Assembly (NCBI RefSeq): GCF_006345805.1 | Contig: NC_043021.1 | Location: 21,762,001-21,826,000 of the forward strand | Direction of reading: 5' to 3' | DNA: 64,000 bases | Source: Octopus sinensis | Taxonomy: Eukaryota | Shown: one piece after another, positions 4,601-8,433 of the stretch | How the letters are laid out: the number at the start of each line of letters is the position of its first letter | Numbering within the stretch: position 1 is the stretch's first letter | Made by a program: the position numbers and the translations under genes | The notes under the pieces: model-generated | Databases searched by the model: none | Told to the model about the DNA's origin: nothing | What the model saw: the letters and a program-made list of their open reading frames with translations, nothing else

Positions 4601-4788
4601 CATATATATTGGAGTCATTCAATATTTTTCTCTGAAATGCAAATTGTAAGAAAATACTGAATAACTCTCTGTTATTCTCTCTCTGTTTAGTAGTAAATTC
4701 TTTTGAATTGTTCATTTTCTAGTCAAACAATTCTCTACATTATCTCTGTGTGTGTGTGAGTGCAAATATATATATATATATATATATA

Positions 4789-4841
4789 TTTTTCTAGTTT
4801 CAGCTCAGAGCTGCGGCCATACTGATGCACCGCCGCTTAGT
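4789..4841 (-). mobile_element. SINE-A-like 3' tail fused downstream of the 5S copy
   Basis: ACTAAGCGGCGGTGCATCAGTATGGCCGCAGCTCTGAGCTGAAACTAGAAAAA versus SINE-A tail ACTAAAGGCGGTGCTCCAGCATGGCCGCAGTCAAATGACTGAAACAAGTAAAA. Confidence 0.75.
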
Positions 4842-4848
4842 AATGGAA

Positions 4849-4967
4849 TGCTTACAGCACCAAGGTTTCCCAAGCGGTCACCCATCTAAGTACTAACTAG
4901 GCTCGATGTTGCTTAACTTCGGTGACCGGACAAGAACTGGTGCTTTCAACATGATATGGCCGTAAGC
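4849..4967 (-). rRNA. 5S: Dispersed full-length 5S rRNA copy, probably a retro-pseudogene or SINE head
   Basis: Minus strand reads GCTTACGGCCATATCATGTTGAAAGCACCAGTTCTTGTCCGGTCACCGAAGTTAAGCAACATCGAGCCTAGTTAGTACTTAGATGGGTGACCGCTTGGGAAACCTTGGTGCTGTAAGCA; recognisable 5S with box A/C regions, CpG-decay-like changes and no T4 terminator. Confidence 0.92.
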
Positions 4968-5149
4968 CATATATATTTGATAATTATAAGACATAATTAT
5001 AACAAGGGATTGGCTATAAGCCTCTCTGCGCACAGGGAAAATAGATGCCAAAAGACACTCTTACCACCTTAAAATCCCCGAGAATAGCACACTGGGTTGT
5101 AGGTGAGCAAAAGAAAGATAATGAATTAAACTTTAGTTACATATATATG

Positions 5150-8197: not shown

Positions 8198-8433
8198 GGA
8201 GGCGCAATGGCCCAGTGGTCAGGGCAGTGGACTTGCGGTCGGAGGATCGCGGTTTCGATTCCCAGACCGGGCGTTGTGTGAGTTTATTGAGCGAAAACAC
8301 CTAAAAAGCTCCACGAGGCTCCGGCAGGGGATGGTGGTGATCCCTGCTGTACTCTTTCACCACTCTAAAGGCGGTGCTCCAGCATGGCCGCAGTCAAATG
8401 ACTGAAACAAGTACAAAAAAAAAAAAAAAAAAA
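8198..8433 (+). mobile_element. Chimeric SINE: SINE-C head and body joined to SINE-A tail and poly(A)
   Basis: 8198-8363 matches SINE-C (GGAGGCGCAATGGCCCAGTGG...GGTTTCGATTCCC); 8365 onward matches the SINE-A tail CTAAAGGCGGTGCTCC. Confidence 0.85.

What the first reader, a model, noticed from the sequence alone, without database searches (positions are those of the whole stretch)
4789..4967. Full-length 5S rRNA fused to a SINE-A-type tail with compensatory hairpin changes: candidate 5S-headed SINE (SINE3)
Seen: a ~119-nt 5S copy with no T4 terminator is followed, after a few nt, by a ~50-nt segment related to the SINE-A tail, and the unit sits between TA-rich flanks. The tail hairpin CAGTC-AAAT-GACTG of SINE-A reads CAGCT-CTG-AGCTG here: four stem bases differ yet all pairs are kept. 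The upstream GGC..TGC/G(C/T)A..GCC stem is also kept. Established: LINE-recognised 3' stem-loops let Pol III heads become SINEs, and 5S-derived SINE3 families exist in other animals. Inference: this is a distinct 5S-headed retroposon lineage using the same LINE machinery, rather than a decayed SINE-A. I do not recall one described for cephalopods, but I cannot check that.
Basis: partly seen in the sequence, partly recalled or inferred. Interest (0 to 1): 0.75.

Follow-up and report, generated by a model that had tools for sequence, protein, structure and literature searches.

The report
One-off 5S rRNA–LINE tail retrocopy
This is a dead retro-copy of a 5S ribosomal RNA transcript welded to the last 50 bases of an octopus LINE; it is one of many such fusions that arose separately, so it has the build of a 5S-headed SINE but does not belong to a self-propagating family.

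Summary
On the minus strand, window 4967-4849 is a complete 5S rRNA copy (Rfam, 105 bits). It is followed by 10 nt and then a 50-nt two-hairpin tail, inside a (TA)n tract. The hairpin pairs covary across tail types.

The tail is not a diverged SINE-A tail. It matches 48/50 the 3' end of a separate LINE family (1,280 exact genome copies; 12 of 20 sampled run up into ORF2). The 10-nt linker looks like the natural 3' trailer of a 5S gene.

5S+tail units are dispersed, but they are not one lineage:
- Among 48 such copies, heads are 93-95% alike, tails 89-92%, linkers only 61%, with 47 different linkers.
- The linkers resemble the differing trailers of genuine 5S genes, plus 1-5 T.
- All 68 dispersed copies that carry an exact 5S 3' word are chimeras: 30 with bare tails of at least 5 LINE types, 38 with SINEs of at least 5 families.
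- This window's junction is unique in the 2.7-Gb genome.

Best reading: a one-off chimeric retrocopy made when the LINE reverse transcriptase jumped from its 3' module onto a nascent 5S transcript. That kind is known (U6/5S-L1, U6-L2). An earlier report of this scan on other DNA reached the same conclusion.

The parts
4849..4967 (-). Full-length 5S rRNA retrocopy (119 nt). The internal control region is untouched. It has 5 substitutions against the genome's 5S consensus.
   Evidence: Rfam RF00001, 105.2 bits, model 1-120. Differences from consensus at positions 17, 30, 36, 42 and 106.
4839..4848 (-). Linker TTCCATTACT, read as the 3' trailer of the source 5S gene, up to the first T of its terminator.
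   Evidence: Genuine 5S genes on contig C4 carry gene-specific trailers such as TTCCATTACC+T11 and TTCTATTACT+T5. The word 'end of 5S + TTCCATTACT' occurs at 6 dispersed loci. Three of them have been read and carry different partners.
4789..4838 (-). 3' recognition module of a LINE family (called LINE-ATC here): AA(G)C lead, hairpin 1, hairpin 2, GAAACTAG, A5.
   Evidence: 48/50 identical to the LINE 3' end. The exact 32-nt tail word has 1,280 genome hits. Of 20 sampled, 12 continue upstream into the 3' UTR and the ORF2 C-terminus.
4813..4836 (-). Hairpin 1 of the tail (GCGGC..GCCGC outer stem, GUGC/GUAU inner stem).
   Evidence: MFE fold. Consensus structure, with the basal pair covarying C-G / U-A between LINE families.
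4802..4812 (-). Hairpin 2 of the tail (AGCU-CUG-AGCU).
   Evidence: All 5 pairs of this helix show changes on both sides across tail types.
4767..4788 (.). (TA)n microsatellite at the 3' side of the insert: target sequence and probable target-site duplication.
   Evidence: AATATATAT is found on both sides.
4968..4978 (.). 5' flank AAATATATATG (read on the minus strand): the other copy of the TA-rich target, ending in the ATG seen before most full-length 5S chimeras.
   Evidence: ATG precedes GCTTACGG in 15 of 22 full-length copies.

Best explanation
Window 4789-4967 (minus strand) is a single chimeric retrocopy that was dead on arrival. A LINE of the two-hairpin, simple-repeat-tailed type began target-primed reverse transcription in a (TA)n tract. 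This LINE is called CR1-like in earlier notes; I did not verify the clade. It copied only its own ~50-nt 3' recognition module. Two to three nucleotides beyond the base of hairpin 1, the enzyme continued on a different template: a nascent RNA polymerase III transcript of a 5S rRNA gene that still carried its gene-specific 3' trailer. The 5S was copied to its 5' end and the whole piece was integrated in one event. What is shown: the three-part anatomy, the LINE origin of the tail, the trailer-like nature of the linker, the uniqueness of this junction, and the combinatorial diversity of sister chimeras. What is inferred: the template jump itself, as opposed to RNA-RNA ligation before reverse transcription, and the idea that the jump starts from the 5' end of a discrete tail-only RNA. 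The copy has no progeny and about 4% decay, so it is a proto-SINE by build and not a member of an amplifying SINE3 family.
For: (a) The tail is LINE-derived. It matches the 3' end of LINE-ATC at 48/50. Twelve of 20 randomly listed copies of that tail extend upstream into a 3' UTR and an ORF2 C-terminus (tblastn E 1e-20 to 1e-30 against a related LINE ORF).
(b) The linker is a 5S gene trailer. Genuine 5S genes in the C4:131.78-131.98 Mb cluster share an upstream TATA-like motif but have different trailers before their T-runs. The linkers of dispersed copies reproduce those trailers plus 1-5 T, for example TTACCTTTTGTT, TTCCATTTACTTTTTT, TTCCCTTCTGTTT and TATTTTTT.
(c) The copies arose independently. 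Head identity is 93-95%, tail 89-92%, linker 61-62%, with 47 distinct linkers in 48 copies. The one shared linker (L016 and L153) is joined to tails of different LINE subfamilies. Heads of the 9 window-type copies share no derived substitution apart from one CpG site.
(d) Partners combine freely. All 68 unique dispersed copies carrying an exact 31-nt 5S 3' word are chimeras. Thirty carry bare LINE tails (15, 3, 6, 5 and 1 across five tail types). Thirty-eight carry SINEs of at least 5 families, mostly joined at the SINE's 5' end. None is a lone 5S retrocopy. The same trailer occurs with different partners and the same partner with different trailers.
(e) This junction is unique: a 32-mer with up to 3 mismatches gives 1 genome hit.
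(f) The constant junction position has an independent explanation. Of 30 sampled copies of the two LINE tails, 13 are tail-only insertions that start within -4 to +5 nt of the base of hairpin 1. One is a tRNA-like transcript with a T6 trailer joined at the same point.
(g) Integration was a single event. One target duplication flanks the whole chimera in L007, L027 and L020, and a TA-rich duplication flanks this copy.
(h) The same logic is published for stringent LINEs. U6-L2 and U6-SINE chimeras exist in platypus and lizard, where cellular RNAs are found only when fused to the LINE 3' segment (PMC4476161). 5S/L1 chimeras exist in human (bioRxiv 10.1101/2025.02.02.635956).
Against: - The junction with the tail is remarkably constant for independent events. 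In L1 chimeras the LINE part varies in length. I explain this by the tail-only hot spot, but its cause is not shown.
- This copy has no T4 between head and tail and an intact internal control region, so read-through Pol III transcription and re-mobilisation cannot be excluded from sequence alone.
- No genuine 5S gene with exactly the trailer TTCCATTACT is in the assembly; the nearest differ by 1 nt.
- The samples come from exact-word hits, so they are biased to young copies. An older true 5S-SINE family could have been missed.
- The reads test was uninformative.
Confidence: 0.78

Rival explanations
1. A true 5S-headed SINE (SINE3) family. One or a few master copies are transcribed by Pol III from the 5S internal promoter through the tail and are copied by the LINE. 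This locus would be one of their progeny.
For: The architecture is that of SINE3. The 5S+tail build is found at many loci with unrelated flanks (40 of 40 scored, 1,486 first-look candidates). The tail always starts at the same place. This copy has no T4 in the linker. ATG precedes most full-length copies.
Against: There are 47 different linkers in 48 copies, 61% alike against 93-95% for the heads. The linkers resemble trailers of different genuine genes. Fifteen of 48 linkers contain T4-5 and 3 contain oligo(A), which would stop or could not come from a read-through master. The same heads are joined to five tail types and five SINE families. This copy's junction is unique. There are no shared derived substitutions. 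The ATG also precedes 5S fused to whole SINEs and lies inside target duplications.
Confidence: 0.06
2. The same one-off chimera, but made at the RNA level. A 3' fragment of LINE RNA, cut just 5' of hairpin 1, was ligated to the 3' end of a 5S primary transcript, for example by an RtcB-type ligase. The chimeric RNA was then reverse-transcribed from end to end.
For: This is demonstrated for U6/L1 chimeras in human cells (PMC6789731). It would explain a constant junction if the LINE RNA is cut at a fixed place. Tail-only insertions with the same 5' end (13 of 30) fit a discrete tail RNA fragment.
Against: RtcB needs a 2',3'-cyclic phosphate, which U6 has. Nascent 5S and pre-tRNA transcripts ending in U-OH are not known to have one (established knowledge, not tested here). 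Chimeras with oligo(A)-tailed 5S and multi-part chimeras (L147) fit serial template jumps at least as well. Sequence cannot discriminate between the two.
Confidence: 0.13
3. Two separate events: a 5S retrocopy or DNA-mediated 5S orphon landed next to an older tail-only LINE fragment, or the reverse.
For: Tail-only LINE fragments are common, and both they and the chimeras favour (TA)n tracts.
Against: Sixty-eight of 68 dispersed 5S copies abut a LINE or SINE partner directly at the end of their trailer, always in the same orientation, and none stands alone. No target duplication or extra sequence lies between the parts. Single duplications flank whole chimeras. A stringent LINE should not copy a tail-less 5S at all (PMC4476161).
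Confidence: 0.02

Closest known systems
U6 snRNA chimeras with stringent LINEs and their SINEs (U6-L2 and U6-Mon-1 in platypus; U6-L2, U6-RTE and U6-AnolisSINE2 in lizard), Doucet et al. 2015, PMC4476161
   Same: A Pol III small RNA in sense orientation is fused to a short 3' segment of a stem-loop or simple-repeat-tailed LINE, or to that LINE's SINE. Target duplications are small. There are no poly(A)-type lone pseudogenes, because the LINE needs its own 3' end. The authors interpret them as template switching.
   Different: Here the captured RNA is 5S rRNA, mostly full length and with its primary-transcript trailer. The host is a cephalopod. The LINE part is cut to a nearly constant ~50-nt module. 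The numbers are far larger than tens: 68 copies carry one exact 31-nt word alone.
L1-mediated chimeric retrogenes (U6/L1, 5S rRNA/L1 and others) in mammals; Buzdin and colleagues as cited in bioRxiv 10.1101/2025.02.02.635956; RtcB ligation model, PMC6789731
   Same: Two-part inserts made in one retrotransposition event, with the small RNA at the 5' side and the LINE 3' end at the 3' side. Each insert is independent.
   Different: L1 is a relaxed, poly(A)-dependent LINE. The L1 parts vary in length. Human 5S/L1 chimeras are few, often antisense and truncated (same preprint). The octopus ones are sense, mostly full-length, and retain the trailer.
SINE3 (zebrafish, Kapitonov and Jurka 2003) and other 5S-headed SINEs (HaSE3, CoeSINE5, MEG-RS, Ped-1), as listed in PMC10946416, PMC5786205 and PMC10886601
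   Same: A 5S-derived head with an internal Pol III promoter plus a LINE-derived 3' tail. This locus has exactly that ground plan.
   Different: Those are families whose copies descend from source genes and share one head-body-tail junction. Here every copy has its own junction and this junction is single-copy. The 2024 review (PMC10946416) lists 5S SINEs only for reptiles, insects, fish and mammals. The giant squid genome paper only remarks on ~24,000 5S-derived loci (PMC6962438).
Tripartite chimeric pseudogenes of Magnaporthe (double template jumps during LINE reverse transcription), PMC2104539
   Same: Serial template jumps give multi-part inserts. L147 (partial tail + full tail + 5S) and the 5S + whole SINE copies look like this.
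   Different: A fungal LINE (MGL) and a different captured RNA.

Membership tests
SINE3 (5S rRNA-derived SINE family) | Head derived from 5S rRNA with the internal promoter region (box A, IE, box C) present | tested here: met
   RF00001 at 105 bits, full length. No substitution in positions 50-97. Promoter activity itself was not tested.
SINE3 (5S rRNA-derived SINE family) | 3' tail derived from a partner LINE's 3' end | tested here: met
   48/50 to the 3' end of a LINE whose copies run into ORF2.
SINE3 (5S rRNA-derived SINE family) | Many copies that descend from source copies: same head/tail junction and shared diagnostic substitutions at different loci | tested here: not met
   The junction 32-mer (up to 3 mismatches) is unique in the genome. 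There are 47 linkers in 48 copies, at 61% linker identity. No shared derived substitutions.
SINE3 (5S rRNA-derived SINE family) | No Pol III terminator between head and tail, so that the tail is transcribed | tested here: inconclusive
   This copy has no T4. Among sister copies, 15 of 48 have T4-5 and 3 have oligo(A) in the linker. No transcript evidence.
LINE-mediated chimeric retrocopy (template-switch type) | 5' part is a cellular RNA with its native 3' end; 3' part is the 3' end of a LINE or SINE; both in sense orientation | tested here: met
   5S plus gene-type trailer plus LINE module, all on the minus strand.
LINE-mediated chimeric retrocopy (template-switch type) | Junctions differ from copy to copy (independent events), with several partner elements | tested here: met
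   Sixty-eight of 68 dispersed copies are chimeric, with at least 5 tail types and at least 5 SINE families. Trailers and partners combine freely.
LINE-mediated chimeric retrocopy (template-switch type) | One target-site duplication around the whole chimera | tested here: inconclusive
   Here both flanks are (TA)n, so the AATATATAT match is weak evidence. Clear cases in sister copies are L007 (8 nt, 1 mismatch), L027 (14 nt, 1 mismatch) and L020.
LINE-mediated chimeric retrocopy (template-switch type) | Reverse transcriptase jumps between RNA templates during one TPRT event | not testable with these tools
   This needs an enzymatic or cell-based assay. RNA ligation before reverse transcription gives the same DNA product.
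CR1-like (CR1/L2 group) LINE as the partner | RT/EN phylogeny places the LINE in that clade | not tested
   Only the last ~70 codons of ORF2 could be read. The Atlas search gave no named family. The label comes from earlier notes of this scan and from the stem-loop plus simple-repeat 3' end.

The most novel reading that the evidence does not exclude
The octopus two-hairpin LINEs produce, or stall on, a discrete ~50-nt tail-only template that ends 2-4 nt before hairpin 1. From that end the reverse transcriptase routinely jumps onto nascent Pol III transcripts (5S, pre-tRNA, and U6 according to earlier notes of this scan) and onto whole SINE RNAs. This would make the genome a standing factory of proto-SINEs. 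It would explain why unrelated octopus SINE families all carry the tail from exactly the same boundary. It would also offer a natural system in which the first step of SINE birth can be counted and tested.
Probability: 0.3. Interest if true: 0.6.

Novelty: new member of a known kind. Interest (0 to 1): 0.35.

Why it matters
The locus on its own is an ordinary dead retrocopy. Its value lies in what the set of sister copies shows. In a genome ruled by stringent, stem-loop-dependent LINEs, every dispersed 5S copy examined had to borrow a LINE tail or a whole SINE to be inserted, and it did so anew each time.

This is the raw material from which 5S-headed and tRNA-headed SINEs are thought to arise, caught in large numbers with the primary-transcript trailers still attached. 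It also warns annotators: repeat libraries that collapse these copies into a 'SINE/5S' consensus would describe a family that does not exist as a lineage.

I found no paper describing this for cephalopods. My search was limited to open-access text, and Repbase and Dfam could not be consulted.

Tried and rejected
- **Gapped genome pattern.** A pattern of the form 5S end - N{1,30} - tail start, meant to list linkers directly, returned 0 although known copies fit it. 
- **Full-length LINE copies.** The partner LINE's clade therefore rests on earlier notes and on the 3' architecture.
- **ESM Atlas search** with the ORF2 C-terminus gave only unnamed clusters.
- **Reads test.** No run on record as RNA holds the stretch. 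Contigs of four runs lie on the tail or on the 5S but break at 4835 and 4847-4852. None bridges this junction, so nothing can be said about transcription. The loose ends there are LINE 3' UTR on one side and assorted 5S trailers on the other, which fits many different junctions.
- **Nested insertion, DNA-level orphon and a decayed SINE-A** were each considered and rejected. The tail matches SINE-A only at 41/53 against 48/50 for the LINE, and no SINE-A body is present.
- **The ATG before most copies** was considered as a shared 5' extension that might mark a master lineage. I rejected this because it also precedes 5S fused to whole SINEs and lies inside target duplications.
- **Paper searches** for SINE3 or 5S SINEs in cephalopods found no description.

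Full report
**What is at the coordinates**

The feature lies on the minus strand. Rfam finds one 5S rRNA in the 64-kb window, at 4967..4849. It scores 105.2 bits against a gathering score of 38, covers model positions 1-120 and is not truncated.

Read on the minus strand, the order of parts is as follows:
- a TA-rich flank ending in ATATATG;
- the 5S copy;
- ten bases, TTCCATTACT (4848..4839);
- a 50-nt tail (4838..4789) ending in GAAACTAG plus A5;
- a (TA)n tract.

No T4 terminator follows the 5S. The tail folds into two adjacent hairpins (-18.2 kcal/mol, z = -2.3).

**Is the hairpin conservation real?**

I aligned ten tails of five types:
- this copy;
- the two LINE families described below;
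- two subfamily variants;
- the AGCC-TTCG-GGCT type;
- the SINE-A type AGTC-AAAT-GACT;
- a fifth, longer type.

RNAalifold returns a 13-pair, two-hairpin structure. On that structure 96% of cells pair. Six pairs have changes on both sides, including all five pairs of hairpin 2 and the basal pair of hairpin 1. None of 500 column shuffles reaches the observed values. Sliding the partners by 1-3 columns drops pairing to 25-40%. The two hairpins are therefore a conserved RNA element shared by several LINE and SINE tails in this genome. That is the usual signature of a 3' recognition signal of a stringent LINE.

**Where the tail comes from**

The window's tail is not a diverged SINE-A tail. Its exact 32-nt core occurs 1,280 times in the 2.72-Gb genome. 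The first 20 places break down as follows:
- 12 continue upstream into a common 3' UTR and then into an open frame;
- 7 are bare tails;
- 1 is a tRNA-like gene with a T6 trailer joined to the tail.

The open frame ends about 75 nt before the tail. It aligns with the ORF2 C-terminus of a related LINE found by chance in locus L087 (tblastn E 1e-20 to 1e-30).

The window tail matches this LINE's 3' end at 48/50. It matches a sister LINE family (type i) at 43/51 and the SINE-A tail at 41/53. The sister family's exact 33-mer has 2,414 genome hits. Of its first 10 places, 4 are LINE 3' ends and 6 are bare tails. The two LINEs are 73% identical over their last 290 nt.

I could not fetch full copies to place the RT in a clade. 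Earlier notes of this scan call these LINEs CR1-like, and I did not verify that.

SINE-A, the abundant element of the window (19 tail hits), has a tRNA-like head, an internal microsatellite, and the type-iii tail. That tail starts at exactly the same boundary. A second, unrelated SINE in the window also starts its tail there.

**Is the 5S+tail unit a family?**

At first sight it is. A genome search with the 179-nt unit gives 1,486 first-look candidates. All 40 scored matches span both the 5S and the tail at 87-92% identity, on many chromosomes and with unrelated flanks.

The part between head and tail says otherwise. The genuine 5S genes sit in a cluster on contig C4 (131.78-131.98 Mb), with a smaller group at 135.79 Mb. 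They occur in both orientations. They share a conserved upstream TATA-like motif. Each gene or gene group, however, has its own 3' trailer before a run of 5-20 T. Examples are TTCCATTACC, TTCCCTTCTG, TTCCATTCC, TTACCTTTTG, TTCTATTTC, or no trailer at all.

The linkers of the dispersed copies reproduce these trailers followed by only 1-5 T. Several are exact, for example TTACCTTTTGTT, TTCCATTTACTTTTTT, TTCCCTTCTGTTT and TATTTTTT.

Across 48 unique 5S + bare-tail copies:
- there are 47 different linkers;
- within the two largest tail groups, mean pairwise identity is 93-95% for heads, 89-92% for tails and 61-62% for linkers;
- forty-five linkers end in 0-5 T, and 15 of these have T4-5, which would terminate a Pol III read-through;
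- three linkers carry oligo(A).

The only two copies with the same linker (L016 and L153) carry tails of different LINE subfamilies. The nine copies with the window's tail type share no derived head substitution apart from one CpG site. The window's own junction, searched as a 32-mer with up to three mismatches, occurs once in the genome.

**An unbiased look at dispersed 5S copies**

The exact last 31 nt of 5S occur 75 times in the genome, and I read all of them. Six are genuine genes. One is a local duplicate. The 68 unique dispersed copies are all chimeras:
- 30 are followed by a bare LINE tail. Fifteen are type i, three are the window's type, six are the AGCC-TTCG-GGCT type with (TTTTTAAGGA)n, five are the SINE-A type, and one is a fifth type.
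- 38 are followed by a SINE. Nineteen are SINE-A, and 9, 7, 2 and 1 belong to four other families. They are usually joined at the SINE's 5' end and sometimes inside it.

No lone 5S retrocopy was found.

The same trailer turns up with different partners. TCACACATTT is joined to three tail types and two SINE families. TAGCACATT is joined to two tail types. The window's TTCCATTACT occurs at six loci; of the three read, one carries a SINE, one the fifth tail type and one this LINE tail.

Eight copies have a mature 5S end followed by A5-10 instead of a trailer. One copy (L147) has a partial tail, a full tail and the 5S, which points to two jumps.

This free recombination of 5S RNA species with partner RNAs is what independent RNA-level events predict. 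It is not what a SINE lineage predicts.

**Why the junction is nevertheless constant**

In every 5S chimera, and in the tRNA chimera, the LINE-derived part starts at AA(A)T or AA(A)C. That is 2-3 nt before the basal pair of hairpin 1. The LINEs themselves read ...CCAAATGGCGG and ...CAAAACGGCGG there.

The same point is a hot spot for the LINEs' own truncated copies. Thirteen of 30 sampled tails are bare and begin within -4 to +5 nt of that base pair. The other truncation points are scattered.

The enzyme, or its template, therefore often ends just after the recognition module. A jump to another RNA from there gives the constant boundary without common descent. The cause of the hot spot is not shown. 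One idea is a discrete tail-only RNA left by 5'-to-3' decay that stalls at the protein-bound hairpin. This would also explain why SINE RNAs are copied through the boundary (17 of 17 in the window) and are joined to 5S at their own 5' ends.

**One event, and its age**

Single target duplications flank whole chimeras in L007 (TGCA[C/A]ATG), L027 (14 nt) and L020. In the window both flanks are (TA)n, so the AATATATAT match is only weak evidence.

The window copy differs from the 5S consensus at 5 of 119 positions (3 of them CpG) and from the LINE tail at 2 of 50, about 4% overall. Its internal control region is untouched, but it lacks the upstream motif of the genuine genes. Whether it can be transcribed is unknown.

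Public-run contigs lie on the 5S or on the tail and break at the junction. None bridges it, and no run on record as RNA holds the stretch.

**Comparison with what is known**

The closest described cases are U6 chimeras with stringent LINEs and their SINEs in platypus and lizard. The authors argue that in such genomes a cellular RNA can only be inserted after acquiring the LINE's 3' segment by template switching, so lone processed pseudogenes are rare (PMC4476161). The octopus 5S copies behave exactly so.

5S/L1 and U6/L1 chimeras are known in mammals (bioRxiv 10.1101/2025.02.02.635956). For U6/L1 an RNA-ligation route has been shown (PMC6789731), and sequence alone cannot exclude that route here.

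True 5S-headed SINEs (SINE3, HaSE3, CoeSINE5 and others) share the ground plan, but they are lineages (PMC5786205, PMC10886601). A 2024 review lists them only for reptiles, insects, fish and mammals (PMC10946416). The giant squid genome paper merely notes about 24,000 5S-derived loci, 'likely SINEs' (PMC6962438). I found no description for cephalopods in the searchable literature. Repbase and Dfam were not available.

**Earlier notes of this scan**

The scan met the same kind of unit on at least eight other pieces of this genome. One follow-up (s1-420932) concluded that the fusions were mostly made independently, and my tests agree. Another (s1-111527) took its unit for a copy of an ordinary catalogued 5S SINE family, and my data speak against a lineage. 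Notes on U6-tail chimeras (s1-106265) led me to the platypus and lizard paper, which I read.

**Verdict**

- The locus is a one-off chimeric retrocopy of a nascent 5S transcript and a LINE 3' module (confidence about 0.78).
- RNA ligation before reverse transcription is the main mechanistic variant (about 0.13), and a true SINE3 family is unlikely (about 0.06).
- It is a new member of a known kind.

Interest is modest for the locus. It is somewhat higher for the genome-wide pattern, which shows proto-SINEs being made again and again at a fixed structural boundary.

Noticed in passing
L105 (G000:C1:2502318-2502654), tRNA call at 149-243: A 95-nt tRNA-like gene (ARAGORN), with its 3' trailer and T6, is joined to the same LINE tail at the same AAC|GGCGG boundary as the 5S chimeras. 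Nascent tRNA-type transcripts are therefore captured in the same way.
   Followed up: partly
L091-L120 (30 sampled copies of two LINE tails on G000:C1): Thirteen of 30 copies are bare ~50-nt tails whose 5' ends fall within -4 to +5 nt of the base of hairpin 1. This is a sharp truncation hot spot of unknown cause. SINE-A copies do not stop there.
   Followed up: partly
G000:C4:131.78-131.98 Mb and C4:135.79 Mb (L032-L059, L080-L086): The genuine 5S rDNA is a cluster with genes in both orientations. The genes share a conserved upstream TATA-like motif (TATAGAATAAATATATTAAAATTTAC...). They also show two internal variants (GAAAGC/GAAAAC, GGGAAACC/GGGAACCC) and very heterogeneous 3' trailers.
   Followed up: partly
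Genome-wide and loose ends at window 4847-4852: The commonest trailer in chimeras (TCACACATTT; 14 exact hits, all dispersed) and the window's trailer (TTCCATTACT; 6 dispersed hits) have no assembled source gene. Public-run contigs show TCACACATTTTT as the main sequence after 5S. A major 5S array may be missing from the assembly.
   Followed up: partly
5' junctions of L001-L031 and L121-L156; window 4968-4970: ATG directly precedes GCTTACGG in 15 of 22 full-length 5S chimeras, whereas genuine genes have GAT, GTT, GCT or AAA there. In L007 and L027 the ATG lies inside the target duplication. Stand-alone SINE-A copies have ATA at the same place in 18 of 30 cases and keep it at internal 5S|SINE-A junctions. 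This may be a target-site or end-joining preference of the LINE machinery.
   Followed up: partly
L143, L154, L035, L066, L078, L142, L144, L156: In these chimeras the 5S ends at or near its mature 3' end and is followed by A5-10 before the partner. Oligoadenylated 5S RNA was captured as well as primary transcripts.
   Followed up: no
L147 (G000:C22:4972287-4972565); L067 and L068: L147 carries the start of a SINE-A-type tail, then a complete type-i tail, after one 5S. L067 and L068 are 5'-clipped 5S copies that share an upstream stretch (..ACAAACTCAATC). Both cases suggest inserts of three or more parts made by serial jumps.
   Followed up: no
window, 19 sites (e.g. 7055, 8391, 12919, 22038, 59249): SINE-A tails occur 19 times in 64 kb. 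The element has a tRNA-like head (GGCGCAGGAGTGGCTG...) and an internal (TA)n/(TG)n microsatellite of variable length. A second SINE (tail hit at 8391; head GGAGGCGCAATGGCCCAGTGG..., upstream of that site) uses the same tail from the same boundary.
   Followed up: partly
L003 (C9038) = L012 (C30); L138 and L139 (C15, 0.9 kb apart); L061 (two copies 1 kb apart): Identical chimeras with identical flanks point to an unplaced haplotig or duplicate contig in the first case and to local tandem duplications in the others. They should not be counted as independent insertions.
   Followed up: no
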